Part shown: positions 35,391-47,285 of the stretch, in pieces | How positions within the stretch are numbered: position 1 is the stretch's first letter | Layout of the letters: every line of letters starts with the position of its first letter | Source of the DNA: Kudoa neothunni | Lineage: Eukaryota; Animalia; Cnidaria | Direction: 5' to 3' | Assembly (NCBI GenBank): GCA_964304625.1 | Contig: OZ199838.1 | Coordinates: 13,927,002-13,991,001 of the forward strand | Length of the DNA: 64,000 bases | Notes under the pieces: model-generated | What the model saw: only the letters and a program-made list of their open reading frames with translations | Databases searched by the model: none | Told to the model about the DNA's origin: nothing | Made by a program: the position numbers and the translations under genes

Positions 35391-36393
35391 CGATTCGAGG
35401 TAATATAATTATTCTATTTAAATAATTTATAAAAATCTAGGGTTATTGATATGAACCTAATTATATATTTCCTTGACTTGTTTTTTTATAATGATACATG
35501 ATATTTTTTTTACGCACTTGACAATTTAAATATAAAATATTGATAAAAGATTCCAATATAAAACACAGCAATTATTCGTAACAGCACGAATTAGTTTTAA
35601 TTATTTAGAGATGATAAAATAACAAAAAGTTTTTTTATCAAATGTATGATCTTGTGTAATTAATACTTGTCAGTAAACTTTAATACTTTAGAGTTTTCTA
35701 TTAACATCATTCAAATGTTATTGTGATAGGAAACTTGATTCAAAGTTGTAATAAATTTTGGTTAGAAAATCAATACTTTTGACAAAAGTGGGGAACAGAA
35801 CTTTTTTTAAAAAATAATGGGACGTGATAGAAAAAAAAGTTGGGGATACCATTATAAAGCATAATTGGTTAAATATAACGTGAAAAGTTGCAACGGATCA
35901 ATTTAACAGTGGATGCTTCATTTAAAATGTGTAGAGGAAAAAAGTTTATGAATAAATATAAAATTACTAAAGAGAGAAACCAATGAACAACACATGATCT
36001 TTAATAATTATTATAATAAAGATCATTCCAAATATTACACATAGCTAAAGCCTTCTCCATTAACTGTTTAAAGAGAATCATTAAAAGTTAATGATTAAAG
36101 GTAGGTCATAAAAAATAATTTATTTTAAAATTAAGAATTAAAAAGTGATTCAGTTTAATCAAAAATAATTTAAGAAACAAAATTATGTTAAGCCTAAAAC
36201 TGGTGTTTCATTATATTTTTCGCGCTTATCTCAACCCCAGTTAGCACAGAACAGTTTCAAAGACATCTGTAGTACAGTTCATAACAAACCAAACAAGAAA
36301 ACATATTTTTTAAGTAGACTAGCGGTTCGTGTGATATTGAAATAAAATAATTAAATTATAGGTTTTTTTGTTTGCGAGAGACCGGTTCAAGTT

Positions 36394-37567
36394 TCACACA
36401 TTTGGATAAATTGGGGAAAGGGTGAGACCACAATTATTTGTAGCTGAAATTCGGACAAACCCATTTTCTCCCCACTCTGGCCCCCAACTAATTTTAATTC
36501 AATGTTAAATAAAAGTATCAATAAAAGTCTGAATTATTAAATACCTATTTTGGAGAATAAAATATTCTTCTTGGGTTTCGTCGTTACTTCCATATCCCAC
36601 CAGTGTCATATAATGGGAAACCTCAACGAAATCTTCTTCACACGTGTAATCGTTGTATATGCCATTCTTATAATAGAGAAAACTCTTAAGATTAATGGTA
36701 GTTCCGACAATGATTGGCCCATGTGTGTCAAGAAAGTTTTTTATTGTCGTTATGTCATTTTTCAAGAAATCATATCCTTGGATTTTGTATACAGCATCGT
36801 ATTCAACGCTCATTTTGTATTGATCTCCATCACAATCTTGAACCTGTAGTTACAATATGAGCTTATAAAGAGGAATATACCAATTACTTTAGCCTTATAC
36901 GGCTTATATAGTTTCTCTTCCAACAGACCTAGATGTGTAGCGAACATTAAGACAATTTCAGGGAATCCACCCTTGCATCCATGAGTTATGTATCCACAAT
37001 CAAGAATAAACTGCGGGCTGAGCGATACATTGATATTTTTCTTCAAATAAAACTGGTATTCCATTGTTGTCATCTAAGGGTCAATTAGAAAATTTCTGTA
37101 ATCGATTTATACAGCTGCCATAAACCAGCCACCATTGCAAAATCCTTCATCCCTCATGACAAATGGAACATGCTGCGAATAGTCAATGTGGTTAGCAAGT
37201 TTTTCAATCTTATAACTGTTGACGTGCTGAGGGTTTGTGAAATTTTTAATGCGATTTTTGTAGCTAACTTTCTCTCTCAATAAAGTCTCTTCGTCGTTCT
37301 AATAAAGAAGTAAAAAAACCTCGCTTAAATTGGTGTATTCACCAAATGGGCAAATTTGTTTAGTTTTAGCTTTAGTTTATCGTTTTTTTTGTTGAAACTA
37401 GTAATGTAATTTAAATTGTTCACAAATGTGTTGTATCGACGTTGATCTTCCTCAGGATTAAACTTCAGAGAATATTGTTGCTTGTAACCTTCCCATAACA
37501 TATTATGAGGTCGACAGGCACTGTTATGAGCATTCAACCAAATAACAATTCCAGTCAGTACCAACAT
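36394..37567 (-). CDS. Cathepsin-L-like papain-family (C1A) protein, predicted catalytically inactive (Cys25>Gly, Gln19>Glu)
   Basis: Five exons (37567-37343, 37298-37113, 37073-36888, 36843-36545, 36487-36394) give an uninterrupted ORF. It has a signal-like N-terminus, an ERFNIN-type prodomain (EDQRRYNTFVNNLNYITSFN, LNKFAHL), active-site region RDEGFCNGGWFMAA, LSPQFILDC, GCKGG, SHYMTLVGYG and LQNSWGPEWGENG. Confidence 0.88.
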
Positions 37568-40500
37568 CAATTTTTAAAAATGATACGATTAAAATTTAAT
37601 AATATTAAACATAAATACACAATATCTGGTAGTTAATCCGTTATTAAAACTGATAATATTTTATATAGTAACTTACTAACACTATTGGTTAAAATGTAGA
37701 ATACTGGCCACATTTTCCGATTAAAGATAATAATTGGTTCGTAGATTAATCCTGAATTTTTGATGTTAACGTTATGCATTTGATACAATTTAACACCTAA
37801 TGCTTGCAGAAAATATGAATTTCTTATTCTTATTCTTATAGACATAGAATTAATAATAGACGATCGCTAGTGATGAAATATGACAATCAGTAAAAAATCA
37901 TAGTCATCACACTTAAATTTTAGGATAAATAAAGCATGCTTTACTCCATCGATTAAATGGTGTGGCCTGTGGAAATAACTACGAGGGGCTAGCAGTTATT
38001 TAAAGAGTATATTACAGCAACTATTATCGATAACAAATACTGTGCCGAAAATAACCTTCCGGTGGTGAAACGATGATAAATACAAAAAGTTAGAATAATC
38101 AACAGGTTCGATTTATATCGTGGTCGCTGATTTGGATTACGGCCATTATTCTACATCTTAACCTCAATATTTAATATAACGCTTCATTTTTGAAATTTCA
38201 CTTCTTTTAACAACTATATCAACGTAAATAATGTTCAGGTAAAACTGTCATAAAATACCTTAATCAATACGAACAAGCGCTGATTTTATTGCTAATATGC
38301 CATCCTATTCACTATCCGATACTTTAACGTACAAAAGAATCCAATATCAGCCTAAAATGTAAAAAATATGAAATAACTGCATAACATGTGCTGAGAGGTA
38401 CAAAATTTAAGCAGTAATAAAATGAAATATTGTTCTGATCCAACCTAATTTAATGATACAGTTTATATTTTTGACAAGCGTATAAAAAATCCACTACGTG
38501 ATTATAATCAATATTATTTATCATTAGGCGTATCTATTTATTTATATAATTAATACTGTTGGCATGGGTGTAGTTTAAAAGTTAGTCACGTTATTACGGT
38601 TCCTAATGTAGATGGAGAATACAGATAAACATCCATCTGATTTAAAAAATTTACTTTTTCTCATATCAGTGGGAGGTATTTGAAAGGCGCTGCCTATTGA
38701 CACGGATGTTTTTAATCAGAAATGGCAACAACGCTTGTGCACTGTCCATTTTTAATCCCAGTAACCTCTATTTATGGTCGATTTATAAAGTCCATCTTTT
38801 TGAATCTGCTGAATTTAATTATTTTTGGTCCATCGCTAACGCTCCTAGGGCTAAAAATAATGAAATAAAGTCAAAACTATACCTACTTGGATATTGTGAT
38901 CCCTATCAATAACCACTTCCTATTTGAATTTGGTAAAAATGGTTTTACGATTAGTCCCGACATTTATCAATTTATTTTATCACGCCAACATCCTTTTTCC
39001 TAATGTCATTAGGGAATAATTTGTGTTAATCCTAGCAAACAAATCAAAACAATTAATTTATAAAAAAATCTTGTTAAATTAGATTTTATGACTTTTTCCA
39101 TTGGAGATAAAAATTAATACAGATTGCTAATATAAAAAAATTGAACCAATAGAACATTTCATTCGCGACTAGAGAATCTAGTAACAGAATTTATATTGTA
39201 GCATTAAAATACCGAAAATAATTATATTAATGAAATAATAACAATATTATGTTCACATTGGATAGGCCAGGTAGAACGGAGAATCAATCTAAAGGTTGCG
39301 GAAAAGTGTATTTCGAACAATTTAAAAGTTTAAAAAAGTCATGGAAAAATAGTCGAGGCAAGGACAAGAAACCATATTTTATTCAATAAATGGGCCTAAA
39401 CCAATAAGCCTGAAGAAACGTTTTATATTTATTATACTGATCCAGTGCAAGAACATGAAAAATGGTACATTTTAATAAAAATTCTTAACTTAATTGATTA
39501 AATTATTTCTGAAACTAATTTTCAAAACTCAAAGTAATAAAATTCATCCCGTGGTAAAAATGGTGCTGAATGAGTTTCTGTGAAGCTATTACGAATTAAA
39601 AGCTGTGAGCGAAATACTATTCATCAATCAAAAGCTATATCGGCATATGCATCAAGCAGAACCATCCTCTTTAAGGAACAGTCATTAAATTTCTTTAGTA
39701 AAGTTAAGTTCGATCAAATAGGTGGCAATATGCAAATTGATCTTTAGGAACATTGAGACTAAACCCTTCATCCAGATAAATCAGACATCAAGTCCTTCTA
39801 GTTGCAATTTTTAACACTATAAATATATATTTTCTGTTTATTATTAAAAATGTTAGTATTGTTTTATTTAAATCTATTAGCCAATAAAAATTCAAAGAAA
39901 TATGCTGACTCAAAAATAATATGAAACTTACTTAAACAGAGAAACATAAAATGTCGTTTTTTGGTTTTAGTTTTAATTATTATTTTGTTTTTGAAAATAT
40001 CACAGATTACTTTATCGATAATAATTTAGACGAAACGAAAATTTTCTGTTAGGGACAGGGCGAATCGTCAAATTAATGCAATAATATCACAATAAAATTC
40101 AGTCTATTATGTTGATTTAATTTGTTTTTTTAAGAAAATTTGAATACAGTTTCCAGTTGCAACTAGGCTAAAGAAGTTTGCTGAAACTGTGAATTGAATT
40201 TCAAGTTGGAAGAATAAATTGTTATAACATTGAAACGGCGATGTACACAACTCTAGAAAAAACTAATAGAGAAAATCCGGCTTCCTAAAAACGTGATGTT
40301 TCTTATATTGCAATTTGACGTATAGAAATGATTAAGGGTGTGTTTAAATTAGTTATTGACATTGTTACTCCCACCTATCGAAGTACAAAGTATAATTTGA
40401 ATATTTCGAACGATATTTAGATTTAATCTCAAAAAATATTATATGTTGAAGCAGTAATTGTTAAAAACATATATTACTAGAATTTAGCTGTTACATTAGA

Positions 40501-40615
40501 CTACAAGAAAAAAGGACCAGTCGACGCAAAAAATCCCAATCTAAAGTTTGATGAAAATCGTAATAATGTAATTCCATAATTTTTAGTTTAAAAGATGATT
40601 AGATACAATATTTAA

Positions 40616-41821
40616 TCACACAGGAACAGTAGGTAACATATTAAAACCACAAAGATTTTTTGCAGATATTTTTCCAAATCCGTTTATTCCCCAATCTCTT
40701 CCCCAACTAAGTTGCTCAAATAGAAATTCAACACATTAGATGAATGATTACCTATTTTGGAAAATGAAATAATGTTCTTGATATTCCTCGTCGAAACCAT
40801 ATCCAACTAAGACCATTGCATGGTTGGTATCTTCGAAATCAGTGCTACAGGTATGATTGTAAATACCACCACTGTAGAAAAGGAACGATTTGGAATTGAT
40901 AGTGGAGGCAATGGACAATGGACCGTAATTGTAGAGCATACTCTTGAGTTCATCGACACTGCCACCTTTCACTATGTACCCAGATATATTGTAGAAAATA
41001 GCCCTGCTTAAATAAGCGTCGTTACATACCCCATCCTACAACCAAACATTATCAAATATTTATTATATAAATTTAAAAACCTTCATCTGATAAGGGTAAA
41101 CGTTCTCATTAACCAATCCATTGAGACGAGCGAAATCAAACACCATAGAATACTCACCACCATCGCATCCGTTATTTTCAGGCTCACAATCCATCACATA
41201 TTGTGGACTTAATGTGACCAGCTTGTGGTGGTGAATAGCATAATAGTATTCGATTGTAGTTATCTATCGTTTTAATAAATATGTGAATATACTGAACCAA
41301 GATTTACTCCAGACATAGCCCAGCAGGATCCGCATGATCCCTGATCACGCAAAATCACCGGAAATCGCAATGCCCAGTTCAGGTGTTTTGGTACTTTTTT
41401 ATACAAAGAAAAATCCTTATTTTCATAATACAATTTTGAATAATGTGATGGGTGCGTGTTTAAAGGTTTTCTCCGTCTTTCACCGAAAACTTCACTCAAT
41501 TCCTAGAGGAAGGTTAAACGTCGCCAGGACTAGATAATTCGTTGAAAACAATACCATATGCGCAAATTTGTTCAATTCGACGTCACTAGAGTGATTTCTT
41601 AAATTAAAATCCTCAATAAATTTTCTGTTGGAGGTAAAAATTTTGTATCGCTTCACTTCTTCGTTTGGGTCAAACACCAGTCCATGCTTTTTTTTGTGTA
41701 TTTCCCAATGGGCATCAAAAACGCACCACGCGGAATGGCACCAAACAGCAGCGAGCAGAATAGTTATTAGCAGCTTGTCCGTGTCAACATATTTCGTCGC
41801 ACCAACCATCACTAATATCAT
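40616..41821 (-). CDS. Cathepsin-L-like cysteine protease (papain family C1A), catalytically intact
   Basis: Five exons with the same intron positions as the neighbouring copy. ERFNIN-type prodomain (EEVKRYKIFTSNRKFIEDFN, LNKFAHM), RDQGSCGSCWAMSG, LSPQYVMDC, GCDGG, NHAMVLVGYG, FQNSWGRDWGING. Confidence 0.92.
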
Positions 41822-42520: not shown

Positions 42521-45500
42521 TAGAGCTGGCCAAACCGTCACTCTTTGAACGTTATGGTGTGGCTCTCGAACAAAAATTCGTTGATTCAACATTTTTTAAT
42601 TTCAATGATTGCTTTAGTTTAGAAAAATCCACAGTTGGAGCTATTTAATAGACTGAAGAAATGAACTCTTTAATTGTAACCTAGATAGTATTTTTGTCTA
42701 GGAAACATAGTCCCGAACACTCATACTGTTTCAATATTTGATTCAAGCTAGAATTATTACTACAGTCGAGATTGGATATTGCGTGGGTTTCTGGGACAAA
42801 AAAAACCCATGCAATAACAAATTTTTACGCAATATCCAGACCCTTGCGTGCGCACTGCGCGATAAAATACGATTTTTTCGTGTTTACGTCCGATGCCAAT
42901 TAGTGAAAATCAATTTTTTATATATATAAATATATTATTTAATTAAATGAAATGTGATTTATCAAATTTTGTCGAAAAAGCTTGTAATTTTAGTTTGTCG
43001 GAATCTTTCTCTTGATATTTTTAAAACTCGGTCCATTATGGGATGTAAATCAAACAATTCCGTCGGATCCTCTTTAATAAAAGCTTCCCTCAGAACGTTC
43101 ACTGCATTTTTCATTTGATTAATTGAAATTTTGATGTCTTCAATGATTGATTCGCTATCGTCAGATTCGTCACTTATGGGCAATAAGTCCTCATTATTTT
43201 CTTCCTCACATGTTGCTTCATAATCGTCATCAAACATATTTTCTGAATCTTCGATTTCATCCAGAAAAAATTAATTACGTATACGTTAAATATTACCTTG
43301 AGAACAGTTGCTGATTTGAGGTATCTCACTCACATCTTCTTGGTCTATAAACTGATAATAACTTTATTGTCGGAATTTTATTTAATACCTCCAAATATTT
43401 TTGATTTTTTAAAGCAATTAATAATAATTTGCGGCGGAATAATGTCCCAACATTTAGTTAATGTTATCATTGAGTCAAGGAATGTATATTTTTTTATGAT
43501 AGAATCTTCGCATAAAACCATTCGCTCGGTCATTGAACTTTTGTACCTGCTTTTAAGGCAGCGAATGATGCCTAAATCAAGGGTTTGTAAAATACTAGTT
43601 GTATTTTTAGGTAAGAACAAAAATTTGATATTTTCAAAGCAATCAATATTTTTGGATGGCCTGGACATTGGCCCAACAAAATTAAGACTTTTCTATTCTG
43701 ATTTATCATCCTTCGGTTAAACTTTTTCATTATTTCTATAAATATACTAGAAGTCATCCATGCATTTTTTTGTGCATAATATTCACATGGGAGGTGTTTG
43801 ACTCTTTTAAAACATCTAGGATTTTGAAATTTTCCGATAACAACTAATGGGAACTTAACCCATTTAAAGCTGAGGACAGTAAAACAGTCACCCTTTTTTT
43901 GGATAATTTTTTCCCTTAATCCCGACTTCCTCCTTTAAAACATAACTACTATTTTGTAACTGCTCATAATAAAGAGCAGTTTCGTCGATGTTAATAACGT
44001 CTTTTGGATTATATGCTCTGATCAAATCAATGTTCTCAATAATCCATGAGTCGACAGATGCAACATCTGCACTCGCAGCCTCGCCATGGAACTTTTTGAA
44101 AACTATCCCATATCTTGACTTGAACCCTGCAAGCAATCCCTTGTTGGCTTTAAAATTGGAAACTTTGTTTTCATTTGCAATATAAGAAGCCTTTTTGATA
44201 ATGGCATCTCCTGACAGAACGTTACCATTCGACCGTTGTTTAACAAACCAATCATACACTTCATCGTCTATATTTTTGAATTTATCTTCGTGCGAAAGAA
44301 TTCTATCAAGTGTTGAATGACCTTAAATGTGATTTTACAATACTATTCAATAGAAGACTACTATAGCACTCAATTTAAACTTGGAAATTGTCATTGATTT
44401 CGCACCCTTCAACGTTTTTATTGAATTGTAGTAATGGATGATTTCCATTTTCTCTGAAATATTGCGTTGTTCACGGGACATAATGAAAAAACACTATCTG
44501 AATTAAACCAATTGACCACAAAAAACCACGCAATAAAAAATTTCCACGCAATAACGAGACTTTTTGTATTAATAAATTTTTTTAAATTTTTTGTTAACAA
44601 ATATTTTTACATTACAATAAGATAATAACAATTTGAAAAAACTAAATTTCTCTCTTTAAAGGATAACTTTGAAAATCTCTAATTACGCAATATCCAGTCA
44701 CGCAGTATCCAATCTCGACTGTGATGTTTTTCCATTACCAAAGTGATGGATATCGTAAGGATAAACACGCATTAAAGCTTGAAAAAGGAGGGTAGACAAA
44801 TGTGAATGAGAATGGTCACAGACTGGCTCTTTGGTTAGTTTAGAAATGACCCAACTCGTCCCTCGGTGCAATTAAAATAACTCGACACGCGCTGTCTCGT
44901 AGCTGCGCCAATTATTTATTAGAATTGGAGCTTAAGTGACAATTCAAATATTATTATTGTATGAAAAAAGTTATGGATTCTTCAGATAAAAAAAACGAAA
45001 ATATGATGACGGCAAAAGAATATTCAATCCAGAATGGGAAGAAGAACTTGCCTGTACCGTGATGAAGGAGGGGGGAGCGAGCCCTTGTGTCTTATTTACA
45101 ATATGTTTTTAAATCACAACAAAGCATTTAACCTGAAACGACATTATGAGAAAAATTACGGGAAATTTTCTCGTGATTATCCTTGAAGTCTCAAATAAGA
45201 ACCAATAAGCCATGTTCTTTTAAGTCATCATTAAATAACCACCGGTCACTTTTGACGACATATTCCACCGAATCTGCTGTATCAACTGAAGCTAGTTTTA
45301 TTATTTCGTGGAATATTTCTCGTGAAAAACGTCCATATTCTGATGGAGAATTTGTCAGGAAGAATATTGCTGAAGTTGTTGCAATTTTAGATCCTAAAAA
45401 CTGATGACTTCAACGTTTGATAGAACAAACACTAGTTTCTCGTCACACTATAGAAAGGCGAATCTCTCAAATTAGTGCTGATGTTTGCGATAAACTACAA

Positions 45501-47285
45501 AATGATCTGAAGAATTCGGTTGCTTTTAGTTTAGCTCTCGACGAATCAACGGACATTCAAAACAATCTCTAATTGGCCATATTCATTCGCTATGTTTTAT
45601 ACGACCTAACTATTAAGGAGGAATTGTTGGATTTGGTGACATTGAAGGAAACTACCCGTGGCGTTGACGCTAAAAATGCACTTGATACAGCCTTAGCAAA
45701 TGTTGGCATTCAATTATGTAATCTCGTTAGCACTTCGACAGATGGAGCCTCTGCGATGGTAGATAAGAATGTAGGCTTAATTGGACTCATGAAAAATGAT
45801 CCAAAGTTTGGAAAACTTATCCCCCTACATTGCACTATTCATCGCGAACATCTGGTTGCAAAATACTTCAAATATGAAGATGTAATGAAGTGTGTACTCG
45901 AAATTATCAATTATATACGATCAAATGGGTAGACTCGTCGACAGTTCAGAAATTTTGTTGAAGAACTTGATATTGATGATAAACTTAACGATGTTTCATT
46001 CTACTGGATTGTGAGATGGCTGTGAATTAGCAATGTCTTGAATAGGTTTATGAAACTTTTAGAACCGATTAGTTCATTCCTTAAAAAAACAAATCATACC
46101 CTCAACTTGAAAATAATTAATGACTCTACGATTTGACGTTTTTTATCAACGTAATGAACAATCTTCAAAAACTCAATTTAGCATTACAAGGAAAGAATAA
46201 ATTGGTTTCCAATCTTGCTCAAACAATTTTCAGTTTCGCGAATAAAATACAAGTTTTCCGACGAGACATAATATCAATAAACTTCATTTATTTTCCAACT
46301 CTCAATAGACAACGAAATTCGTTCCCTGATGATGCAATACAAAATGAGAAATTGGAAGAATATAGAGACAAATTAGTGCAACTTATGAATGACTTAAAGA
46401 TCGTTTTGATGATCTACGGAAACTGAAACCATGATTTTTGTTCCTCATCAACCCATTTGTGATCAATGTAGTTAATGATGGTGTAAAAATTTTGAACCGC
46501 TGGTCACCGATTTTTCAACTGTGGAAATGGAACTAATGGATTTTCAAGAAGGTCTAATTTTAAAGATGATTCATAACTCCAAGTCACCAATAGAATTTTG
46601 GAAAAACGTATTAGGAATGAAATATCCCAAATTGAAAGAAATGAGTGTCAAACTTATATTTTTGGAACAGCTCATTGTTGTAAATCCCTTTATTCTACGA
46701 TGAAGTTTGTAAAATCGAGGCATCGCGGATCCCTCACAAACAAACACTTGACGGAATTAATTCGTACGACTGTAACAGCATATGAACCAGATTTCCGTCA
46801 GCTCACTGATAACATGAAAACACATAAAACTTGTTTCATTAGAAACAATTTATAAAAATTTTTTTACGAATGCATTGATTTATTGTGTTATTACTTTATT
46901 CACAAATATTTTATTTAATTTTTTGTTAGACTATCATATACGATTGAATATGGAAAATATTTTATTACTTTTGCGGCCTTTTTCAGAGAGAAAGCATTTC
47001 TTGGATCATTAACTACTAATATACTTTTCTTGAAAAACTATCATGAATTATACCTGTAAAAATTATATGTAAGTTTTCCAATGACTAACTGAATAGGAAA
47101 ATAATTTAAAAATCTTTATTTATAATTCTACAACATTTTGCATCAGGATGTGCCAAAAGTTCCCAGGAGTGTCAGTTTTAAATAAGAAAGAGATACATAA
47201 AAAGAATTTATAACGCCATGCGACTCTTTAAAATTTGGGCACCTTTAAAGTTAGCTCCCATTCTAGACAAATCTGGTCACTCCTG
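42521..47285 (+). mobile_element. hAT element (GTF2IRD2/SPIN-like transposase pseudogene about 44973-46855) with nested Tigger
   Basis: Fragments KRPYSDGEFV, ALDESTD, STDGASAMV, HCTIHREH, VRWL and FGTAHCCKSLYSTMKFVKSRHRGSLT. Degenerate ends tagagctggccaaa / atctggtcactcctg. Confidence 0.82.
42763..44721 (-). mobile_element. pogo/Tigger transposon with decayed transposase (about 42962-44400)
   Basis: TIRs cagtcgagattggatattgcgtg / cacgcagtatccaatctcgactg, flanked TA / TG. CENP-B-type HTH (WFVKQRSNG...FKANKGLLAGFKSRYGI), NIDETALY, AWMTSSIF and FLPKNTTSILQTLDLGII. Confidence 0.9.

What the first reader, a model, noticed from the sequence alone, without database searches (positions are those of the whole stretch)
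36394..41821. Tandem active plus catalytically dead cathepsin-L pair: an intact pseudoprotease next to its live twin
Seen: two same-strand C1A genes share four intron positions, so they arose by duplication. The 40616-41821 copy has DQGSCGSCWAM. The 36394-37567 copy has DEGFCNGGWFM, so the nucleophile Cys25 is Gly and the oxyanion Gln19 is Glu. It still keeps the prodomain, structural cysteines, catalytic His and Asn, and an unbroken frame despite deep sequence divergence. Known: inactive papain homologues exist (scabies mite SMIPP-Cs, soybean P34 with Cys>Gly, mammalian testin). Inference: this copy is maintained as a secreted non-proteolytic protein, for example a decoy for host cystatins or a ligand binder.
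Basis: partly seen in the sequence, partly recalled or inferred. Interest (0 to 1): 0.8.

Follow-up and report, generated by a model that had tools for sequence, protein, structure and literature searches.

The report
Dead cathepsin-L copy beside live sister
A fish-muscle parasite genome (earlier notes say Kudoa) carries an intact but catalytically disabled copy of a secreted cathepsin-L-type protease next to its working sister gene, a known kind of "pseudoprotease" that is one of at least four such dead copies in this genome.

Summary
Two minus-strand, five-exon papain-family (C1A) genes lie at 36394-37567 (A, 329 aa) and 40616-41821 (B, 339 aa). B has the canonical DQGSCGSCW motif. A reads DEGFCNGGW: Cys25 is Gly (GGC, 37128-37130), Gln19 is Glu and Gly23 is Asn. 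A keeps the I29 propeptide with a full ERFNIN motif, six structural cysteines, His159, Asn175, four GT-AG introns and an open frame.

A and B are sisters (100/100 support) but only 39% identical, so the duplication is old. The four shared intron positions also occur in a third paralogue 1.16 Mb away, so they do not prove it.

A keeps 20 of 24 columns that never vary in live enzymes. Three of the four changes hit the catalytic site. A neutral-decay simulation makes an unselected open frame improbable. A is therefore most likely a maintained pseudoprotease.

Expression, orthologues and ligand are untested: RNA runs held no reads of this organism, and no orthologue was found.

Four of nine C1A genes here lack Cys25, through three independent losses. 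The scan noted this site twice, and the Cys-to-Ser pair on another contig. Gly-His-Asn cathepsin-L-like transcripts were mentioned and set aside in Sphaerospora molnari. This is a new member of a known kind.

The parts
37343..37567 (-). Gene A exon 1: start codon, hydrophobic N-terminus, I29 propeptide with complete ERFNIN motif (37450-37391)
37113..37298 (-). Gene A exon 2: pro/mature junction and the altered active-site helix DEGFCNGGWFMAA
   Evidence: no Pfam match for this exon
37128..37130 (-). GGC codon: Gly at the position of the nucleophile Cys25
   Evidence: read contig with no differing letter
37146..37148 (-). GAA codon: Glu at the position of the oxyanion-hole Gln19
37134..37136 (-). 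AAT codon: Asn at the position of Gly23, which never varies in the live rows
36888..37073 (-). Gene A exon 3: Peptidase_C1 positions 34-94, DC...GCKGG motif kept
36545..36843 (-). Gene A exon 4: Peptidase_C1 positions 108-188, His159 (36613-36615) and Asn175 (36547-36549) kept
36394..36487 (-). Gene A exon 5: SWGxxWGxxG motif, last disulfide cysteine, TGA stop at 36394-36396
41555..41821 (-). Gene B exon 1: hydrophobic N-terminus and I29 propeptide
41308..41502 (-). Gene B exon 2: canonical DQGSCGSCWAMSG, Cys25 codon TGC at 41323-41325
41081..41263 (-). Gene B exon 3
40752..41035 (-). Gene B exon 4 (His159 and Asn175 kept)
40616..40706 (-). Gene B exon 5 and stop codon

Best explanation
Gene A is a real, intact non-peptidase homologue of the papain family (C1A, cathepsin-L-like with I29 propeptide). 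It arose by an old tandem duplication of the ancestor it shares with the live gene B. It lost the nucleophile (Cys25 to Gly), the oxyanion Gln19 (to Glu) and Gly23 (to Asn). It has since been kept under purifying selection on its fold. Shown: gene structure, substitutions, sisterhood with B, retention of fold-defining residues, single copy. Inferred: it enters the secretory pathway through its hydrophobic N-terminus. It cannot activate itself, so it either stays a propeptide-bearing latent protein or is trimmed in trans by a live C1A enzyme such as B or L001. It then acts by binding rather than cutting, through a remodelled cleft. My preferred ligand class is members of the cysteine protease/inhibitor network: host cystatins or stefins, the parasite's own stefin, or substrates of B. 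In that role A would tune or shield the activity of its live relatives, as other parasite pseudoproteases do. I give about 0.6 to 'selectively maintained, non-catalytic protein' and only about 0.2 to the specific inhibitor-decoy mechanism.
For: The frame is open and 4 GT-AG introns of 39-57 nt are intact. I29 and Peptidase_C1 match exon by exon. A+B is a 100/100 clade, with terminal branches of 1.38 (A) and 0.75 (B) changes per site. The relative-rate excess of A is modest: 41 vs 22 unique changes, chi2 5.7 with L001 as outgroup and 2.0-5.2 with others. This looks like relaxed constraint rather than free drift. A keeps 20 of 24 columns that never vary in 12 live C1A rows. The four changes are Q19E, G23N, C25G and a conservative L to I. 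In the 13-codon motif, 17 of 39 nt differ from B, and G23N needs at least two base changes. The inactivation is therefore not a single recent hit. In a neutral-decay simulation the ORF stays open in 7% of runs at 5% divergence and 0.6% at 10%, with substitutions only; with indels it is 0.15% at 5%. GC3 is 0.37 in A, like B (0.39), and above introns (0.25) and spacer (0.285). Hydrophobic N-termini occur only in A, B and L001. Precedents are SMIPP-C pseudoproteases with both Cys and Gln mutated, expressed and binding host proteins (PMC5956821, PMC7815109), and SERA5 (PMC4671257, PMC5500368). Gly-His-Asn cathepsin-L-like transcripts have been seen in another myxozoan (PMC7296530).
Against: There is no evidence of transcription or protein: three RNA runs held no reads of this organism, which is no test. 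No orthologue was found, so conservation of Gly25 and a proper dN/dS are unknown. dS between A and B is saturated. The date of inactivation is inferred only from multiple hits in the motif. A dispersed repeat sits 117 bp upstream of the start codon and could have damaged the promoter. No structure or complex model of the spliced protein could be made. The ligand is pure inference.
Confidence: 0.6

Rival explanations
1. A is a silent or dying gene: a once-active divergent protease that lost its function fairly recently and has not yet acquired a stop or frameshift. It has no present role.
For: No expression data. No orthologue to show conservation. A has the longer branch of the pair. A transposable-element-like repeat lies 117 bp upstream of the ATG and the neighbourhood is rich in transposon remnants.
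Against: Three invariant catalytic-site residues are replaced, needing at least 4 base changes, while only 1 of the other 21 invariant columns changed, and conservatively. Simulated neutral drift closes the frame quickly. All four introns keep GT-AG. GC3 has not decayed to the intron or spacer level. The rate excess over B is under two-fold.
Confidence: 0.15
2. A is maintained, but as an inward-facing regulator of the parasite's own proteases rather than a host-directed decoy. For example, it could be a permanently latent zymogen whose I29 propeptide or body binds and restrains B or L001, or a chaperone or sorting partner for them.
For: The I29 propeptide with a complete ERFNIN motif is retained. 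A cannot process itself. It is linked in tandem with B. Myxozoan stefins are reported to regulate parasite cathepsin L (highlights of PMC13233802, seen), so endogenous control of these enzymes exists.
Against: The propeptides of A and B are only 30% identical (32 of 105), which argues against tight cognate inhibition. No co-expression or interaction data. The complex prediction could not be run on spliced models.
Confidence: 0.17
3. A has acquired a different catalytic chemistry, using for example Glu19 with His159, or is still a hydrolase with a non-canonical nucleophile.
For: His159, Asn175 and Trp177 are kept, and a carboxylate now sits at the oxyanion position beside His. Ser-His-Asn cathepsin relatives such as silicatein do have new activities (a cathepsin-silicatein chimera is among the PDB matches).
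Against: Gly cannot act as a nucleophile. No precedent is known to me for a Glu-His papain-fold hydrolase. Gly23 to Asn and other bulky changes alter the cleft.
Confidence: 0.05
4. Artefact: a sequencing or assembly error at the codon, or a wrong gene model hiding a canonical active-site exon.
For: Only one sample's reads were checked, and they may be the assembly's own source.
Against: The read contig is identical over the whole gene. The motif differs from B at 17 of 39 bases, not one. No alternative exon with a canonical motif occurs in any frame of 36300-38200. Exon junctions fall at the same columns as in B and L001.
Confidence: 0.02

Closest known systems
SMIPP-Cs (scabies mite inactivated cysteine protease paralogues), PMC5956821 and PMC7815109
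   Same: Papain-family paralogues of a parasite with signal peptide and propeptide. Both the catalytic Cys and the oxyanion Gln are mutated. Disulfide cysteines are kept. They occur alongside active paralogues of the same family and are proposed or shown to bind host proteins without cleaving them.
   Different: Independent origin: A's nearest relative is B in its own genome, not a mite group-1 allergen homologue. SMIPP-Cs are a five-member expansion with shown expression and localisation. A is single copy and its expression is unknown.
Plasmodium SERA5 and the Ser-type SERA proteins, PMC4671257 and PMC5500368
   Same: Papain-fold pseudoprotease encoded in tandem with active (Cys-type) paralogues. 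It is secreted and has a non-enzymatic regulatory role.
   Different: SERA5 has Ser, not Gly, at the nucleophile position. It is a large multidomain protein processed by a subtilisin and has no I29 cathepsin-L propeptide.
Soybean P34 (Gly m Bd 30K), rodent testin, silicatein
   Same: C1A homologues with the nucleophile replaced (Gly in P34, Ser in testin and silicatein) that are stable, secreted, functional non-proteases.
   Different: Unrelated lineages and ligands. None is paired in tandem with a live sister in a parasite.
Cathepsin-L-like transcripts with 'Gly-His-Asn' or 'Ser-His-Asn' triads in Sphaerospora molnari (PMC7296530)
   Same: Same phylum-level group (Myxozoa), same family, and the same two kinds of nucleophile loss as seen here in A (Gly) and in L002/L010 (Ser).
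   Different: Those were only mentioned and excluded from analysis. No sequences were available here, so orthology to A is untested.
Solved cathepsins S, K and L (e.g. 4bpv, 2xu1, procathepsin L 1cs8; Fasciola procathepsin L 2o6x)
   Same: They are the best sequence matches of exon 4 among solved structures (E 1e-6 to 5e-5). The architecture is the same: I29 propeptide plus C1 domain.
   Different: All are active enzymes with the Gln19/Cys25/His159/Asn175 set. Identity is only about 30%.

Membership tests
Peptidase family C1A (papain family), cathepsin-L-like subfamily | Peptidase_C1 domain recognisable by sequence | tested here: met
   PF00112 matches exons 3, 4 and 5 of A (E 2.9e-8, 2.4e-12, 1.5e-4). 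Exon 2 gives no match.
Peptidase family C1A (papain family), cathepsin-L-like subfamily | I29 propeptide with ERFNIN motif | tested here: met
   PF08246 matches exon 1 at E 3.5e-11. All six ERFNIN positions are present in EDQRRYNTFVNNLNYITSFN.
Peptidase family C1A (papain family), cathepsin-L-like subfamily | Catalytic nucleophile Cys25 | tested here: not met
   Gly (GGC, 37128-37130) in the alignment column where all 12 live rows have Cys.
Peptidase family C1A (papain family), cathepsin-L-like subfamily | Oxyanion-hole Gln19 | tested here: not met
   Glu (GAA, 37146-37148).
Peptidase family C1A (papain family), cathepsin-L-like subfamily | His159 and Asn175 | tested here: met
   CAT 36613-36615 and AAT 36547-36549 fall in the invariant columns.
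Peptidase family C1A (papain family), cathepsin-L-like subfamily | Three conserved disulfides (22-63, 56-95, 153-200) | tested here: met
   Six cysteines stand at the aligned positions (aa 129, 163, 170, 203, 267, 318). Bond formation itself was not tested.
Functional pseudoprotease (SMIPP-C / SERA5 kind) | Catalytic residues lost while frame, splice sites and fold residues are kept | tested here: met
Functional pseudoprotease (SMIPP-C / SERA5 kind) | Transcribed and translated | tested here: inconclusive
   Three RNA runs labelled with the same species held no reads on the stretch. The organism may simply be absent from them.
Functional pseudoprotease (SMIPP-C / SERA5 kind) | Inactive state conserved in orthologues under purifying selection | tested here: inconclusive
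   No orthologue was found by the word search or by phmmer against 1.84 billion representatives. dS against B is saturated.
Functional pseudoprotease (SMIPP-C / SERA5 kind) | Non-catalytic binding partner | not testable with these tools
   The spliced protein has no reference, so the fold and complex tools could not be used.
Decayed pseudogene | Stops, frameshifts or lost splice sites | tested here: not met
   The 990-nt frame is open and 4 of 4 introns keep GT-AG.

The most novel reading that the evidence does not exclude
The parasite has turned at least four of its nine papain-family genes into non-catalytic proteins through three independent events. The secreted A/B pair would work as a two-gene module: the dead sister, trimmed by the live one, soaks up host muscle cystatins (or the parasite's own stefin), so that live cathepsins can act. 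If so, A would be a controller of the muscle-softening proteolysis for which Kudoa is known.
Probability: 0.1. Interest if true: 0.7.

Novelty: new member of a known kind. Interest (0 to 1): 0.42.

Why it matters
Kudoa cathepsin L is held responsible for post-harvest softening of fish muscle, and C1A enzymes are proposed drug targets in myxozoans (PMC7296530, PMC8777295). If nearly half of the family in this genome is non-catalytic, counts of 'proteases' from domain scans overstate the active arsenal. The dead members also become candidates for host-binding or regulatory proteins, as in scabies mites and malaria parasites. The A/B pair is a convenient natural matched pair for testing what a papain fold does once catalysis is lost. 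The case is not surprising in kind: pseudoproteases next to live paralogues are well known in parasites.

Tried and rejected
(1) The word-index protein search with exon 4 of A found nothing. It only sees proteins of 55-173 aa, so this says little.

(2) phmmer of exon 4 against 1.84 billion representatives gave 258 hits at E up to 0.001. The best was a fish cathepsin at E 1.9e-12 and 32% identity. None of the sequences I read or placed in the tree groups with A/B. No orthologue is available, so there is no dN/dS by orthologues.

(3) dN/dS of A against B: dN is about 0.6, but dS is saturated or undefined under four methods, so it is not usable.

(4) RNA runs X10-X12 gave zero reads, which is no test of expression.

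(5) A second myxozoan-like scaffold was found inside a fish assembly (L027). It holds only the L001 orthologue, and that assembly cannot be searched with these tools.

(6) The supplement of PMC7296530 holds primers only, not the Gly-His-Asn sequences.

(7) The contig of P0014, another Gly-type dead C1A, gave no DNA.

(8) Left out: any search, structure prediction or complex prediction with the joined (spliced) protein of A or B, because it has no reference. Searches were done exon by exon. The joined models were used only inside local scripts for alignment, tree and simulation.

(9) The idea that shared introns prove the A-B duplication is rejected, because L001 shares all four.
Full report
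WHAT IS THERE

The stretch holds two genes on the minus strand. I rebuilt both from the raw sequence.

Gene A has five exons: 37567-37343, 37298-37113, 37073-36888, 36843-36545 and 36487-36394. They give a 990-nt open frame of 329 aa. The introns are 44, 39, 44 and 57 nt long, all GT..AG.

Gene B has five exons: 41821-41555, 41502-41308, 41263-41081, 41035-40752 and 40706-40616. They give 339 aa. The introns are 52, 44, 45 and 45 nt long.

Scanned exon by exon, Pfam finds the cathepsin propeptide domain I29 in exon 1 of both genes. It finds Peptidase_C1 in exons 3-5 of A and exons 2-5 of B. Exon 2 of A carries the active-site helix and is the only exon that no longer matches the family profile. 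Among solved structures, the best matches of exon 4 are cathepsins S, K and L.

THE ACTIVE SITE

B reads DQGSCGSCWAMSG and A reads DEGFCNGGWFMAA. In A:
- the nucleophile position is Gly (GGC, 37130-37128);
- the oxyanion Gln is Glu (GAA, 37148-37146);
- Gly23 is Asn (AAT, 37136-37134).

His159 (36615-36613), Asn175 (36549-36547), Trp177 and the six cysteines of the three papain disulfides are kept. So is a complete ERFNIN motif in the propeptide.

A Logan contig of run X1 covers 36300-37759 with no differing letter. That run may be the source of the assembly, so it is not independent support. An error is in any case excluded by the motif itself, which differs from B at 17 of 39 bases. No other exon with a canonical motif exists in any frame of 36300-38200.

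RELATIONSHIP OF THE TWO GENES

All four intron positions and phases coincide in A and B. They also coincide in a third paralogue, L001, which lies 1.16 Mb away and is a canonical signal-peptide cathepsin L. A four-intron cathepsin L is also reported in Ceratonova shasta (PMC8777295). The introns are therefore ancestral and do not show that A and B duplicated from each other.

The tree does show it. I used 16 rows: nine paralogues of this genome and seven library sequences. A and B are sisters with 100/100 support. They sit on a long common stem of 1.39 changes per site, with terminal branches of 1.38 (A) and 0.75 (B).

Identity between A and B is 39% overall, 30% in the pro region and 42% in the mature part. 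The duplication is therefore old. "Twin" overstates the likeness.

IS A MAINTAINED OR DECAYING?

Direct tests were not possible:
- The three RNA runs carrying the same species label held no read on the stretch, which is no test.
- No orthologue was found. The word search was blank.
- A phmmer search of exon 4 against 1.84 billion representatives gave at best a fish cathepsin at 32% identity. None of the hits I read or placed in the tree groups with A/B.
- A is single copy in its own genome.
- dS between A and B is saturated, so dN/dS is meaningless.

The indirect evidence points one way:

(i) Of 24 alignment columns that never vary in 12 live C1A rows, A keeps 20. The four changes are Q19E, G23N, C25G and a conservative Leu to Ile. 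B keeps all 24. The losses are aimed at the catalytic site while the fold determinants are spared.

(ii) Those three catalytic-site replacements need at least four base changes. The whole motif has diverged as much as the rest of the gene. The inactivation is therefore not one recent hit.

(iii) In a simple neutral-decay simulation on A's own coding sequence, I used the window's base composition and kappa 2. The frame stays open in only 7% of runs at 5% divergence and 0.6% at 10%, with substitutions alone. With a modest indel rate it is 0.15% at 5%. Splice sites were not even counted.

(iv) A's excess of unique changes over B is less than two-fold: 41 vs 22 with L001 as outgroup (chi2 5.7), and chi2 2.0-5.2 with other outgroups. 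This is the signature of relaxed constraint at some sites, not of free drift.

(v) GC3 of A (0.37) resembles B (0.39), not introns (0.25) or spacer (0.285).

Together these make a maintained, non-catalytic protein the best reading. I put it at about 0.6, because expression and cross-species conservation remain unshown.

CONTEXT IN THE GENOME

A six-frame search of the 40-Mb assembly with PF00112 finds nine C1A genes. Earlier notes of this scan call the assembly Kudoa, probably K. neothunni; I did not verify that.

The genes fall into two groups:
- Three have hydrophobic N-termini: L001, A and B.
- Six start directly with the propeptide and have no signal-like segment: L002, L003, L005, L006, L010 and L011. 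This fits the cytoplasmic cathepsin L described from Kudoa thyrsites (my own knowledge).

Four of the nine lack Cys25:
- A has Gly.
- L002 has Ser (FGTSW).
- L010 has Ser and also has His159 replaced by Gln.
- L011 has Leu, with most disulfide cysteines gone.

On the tree this needs three independent losses. The scan had already noted the L002/L010 pair on another contig and had noted A's active site a second time.

[quoted passage not shown] Dead C1A copies are therefore probably a general, unstudied feature of myxozoans.

HOW IT MOST LIKELY WORKS

Shown: A is a prepro-cathepsin-L-like protein without a nucleophile.

Inferred: it enters the secretory pathway like B and L001. Because it cannot cleave, it cannot remove its own I29 propeptide. 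It therefore either remains a latent protein with its cleft occupied, or is trimmed in trans by a live enzyme, B being the obvious candidate.

Once trimmed, it offers a papain-type cleft in which His159, Trp177 and a Phe-Pro S2 wall are kept. Asn23, Phe27, Tyr160 and a carboxylate at position 19 change the floor. Such a cleft could bind, but not cut, peptides or inhibitors.

By analogy with SMIPP-Cs, I favour a binding or titrating role in the cysteine protease/inhibitor network. SMIPP-Cs have the same double Cys plus Gln knockout, are expressed, and bind host proteins to alter clotting (PMC5956821, PMC7815109). SERA5 has a non-enzymatic regulatory role (PMC4671257, PMC5500368).

The network could be outward-facing (host cystatins or stefins) or inward-facing (the parasite's own stefin or its live cathepsins). 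Myxozoan stefins that inhibit parasite and host cathepsin L are described (PMC13233802, highlights seen). A weak cystatin-like match exists in this genome. None of this is tested.

WHAT WAS LEFT OUT

The joined (spliced) proteins have no reference. No database search, structure prediction or complex prediction was therefore run on them. All searches used single exons by reference, and the joined models were used only inside local scripts.

VERDICT

The finding is a new member of a known kind: a papain-family pseudoprotease beside a live paralogue in a parasite. It is of moderate interest, raised somewhat because it belongs to a genome-wide pattern of 4 dead copies among 9, from three independent losses, in a parasite whose cathepsins matter economically.

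Noticed in passing
window 37684-38163: A dispersed repeat of about 480 bp lies 117 bp upstream of gene A's start codon. At least 40 copies at 80-91% identity are spread over three contigs of the genome, and read depth here is 140-360 against about 6 for the genes. It is probably a non-autonomous transposable element.
   Followed up: partly
window 38731-38917: A second stretch in the A-B spacer has raised read depth (about 120) and several variant letters. It is presumably another repeat family.
   Followed up: no
window 43888-44259 (-) and 45573-45932 (+): These open frames match a Tc5/pogo transposase DNA-binding domain (E 1.2e-10) and, weakly, DUF4371 (E 1.2e-3, below cut-off). The cathepsin pair sits in a transposon-rich neighbourhood.
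   Followed up: no
L002 and L010 (G000:C2:9279636-9285191): A tandem pair of C1A genes without a signal-like N-terminus, in which Cys25 is Ser (FGTSW, RSNSW). L010 has also lost His159 (Gln) and several disulfide cysteines. This is the pair already noted by the scan on another contig.
   Followed up: partly
L011 (G000:C1:8337332-8337702 and upstream): A very divergent C1A gene (terminal branch 2.9 changes per site). Leu stands at Cys25 and Ile at Gln19, and most disulfide cysteines are gone. The frame is still open and His159 and Asn175 are kept. This is a fourth dead paralogue.
   Followed up: partly
L027 (GCA_042242105.1, JBCEDJ010000171.1, 43.9 kb): The RefSeq protein 'cathepsin K-like [Pempheris klunzingeri]' (XP_070712365.1) lies on a 27%-GC scaffold. 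Its matching segments fall in five blocks with gaps of roughly 40-55 nt, like L001's exons. It groups 99/96 with Kudoa paralogue L001. The scaffold is probably from a myxozoan parasite, not the fish.
   Followed up: partly
P0014 (Logan contig of SRR23617205): A 302-aa C1A homologue of unknown organism also has Gly at the Cys25 position (DCYSGVAY), and by eye Arg where His159 would be. It is another Gly-type dead papain homologue.
   Followed up: no
L028 (G000:C2:10893038-10893220, -): This is the only cystatin-like match in the genome (PF00031, E 0.03, below cut-off). It is a possible stefin exon and a candidate partner for the cathepsin family.
   Followed up: no
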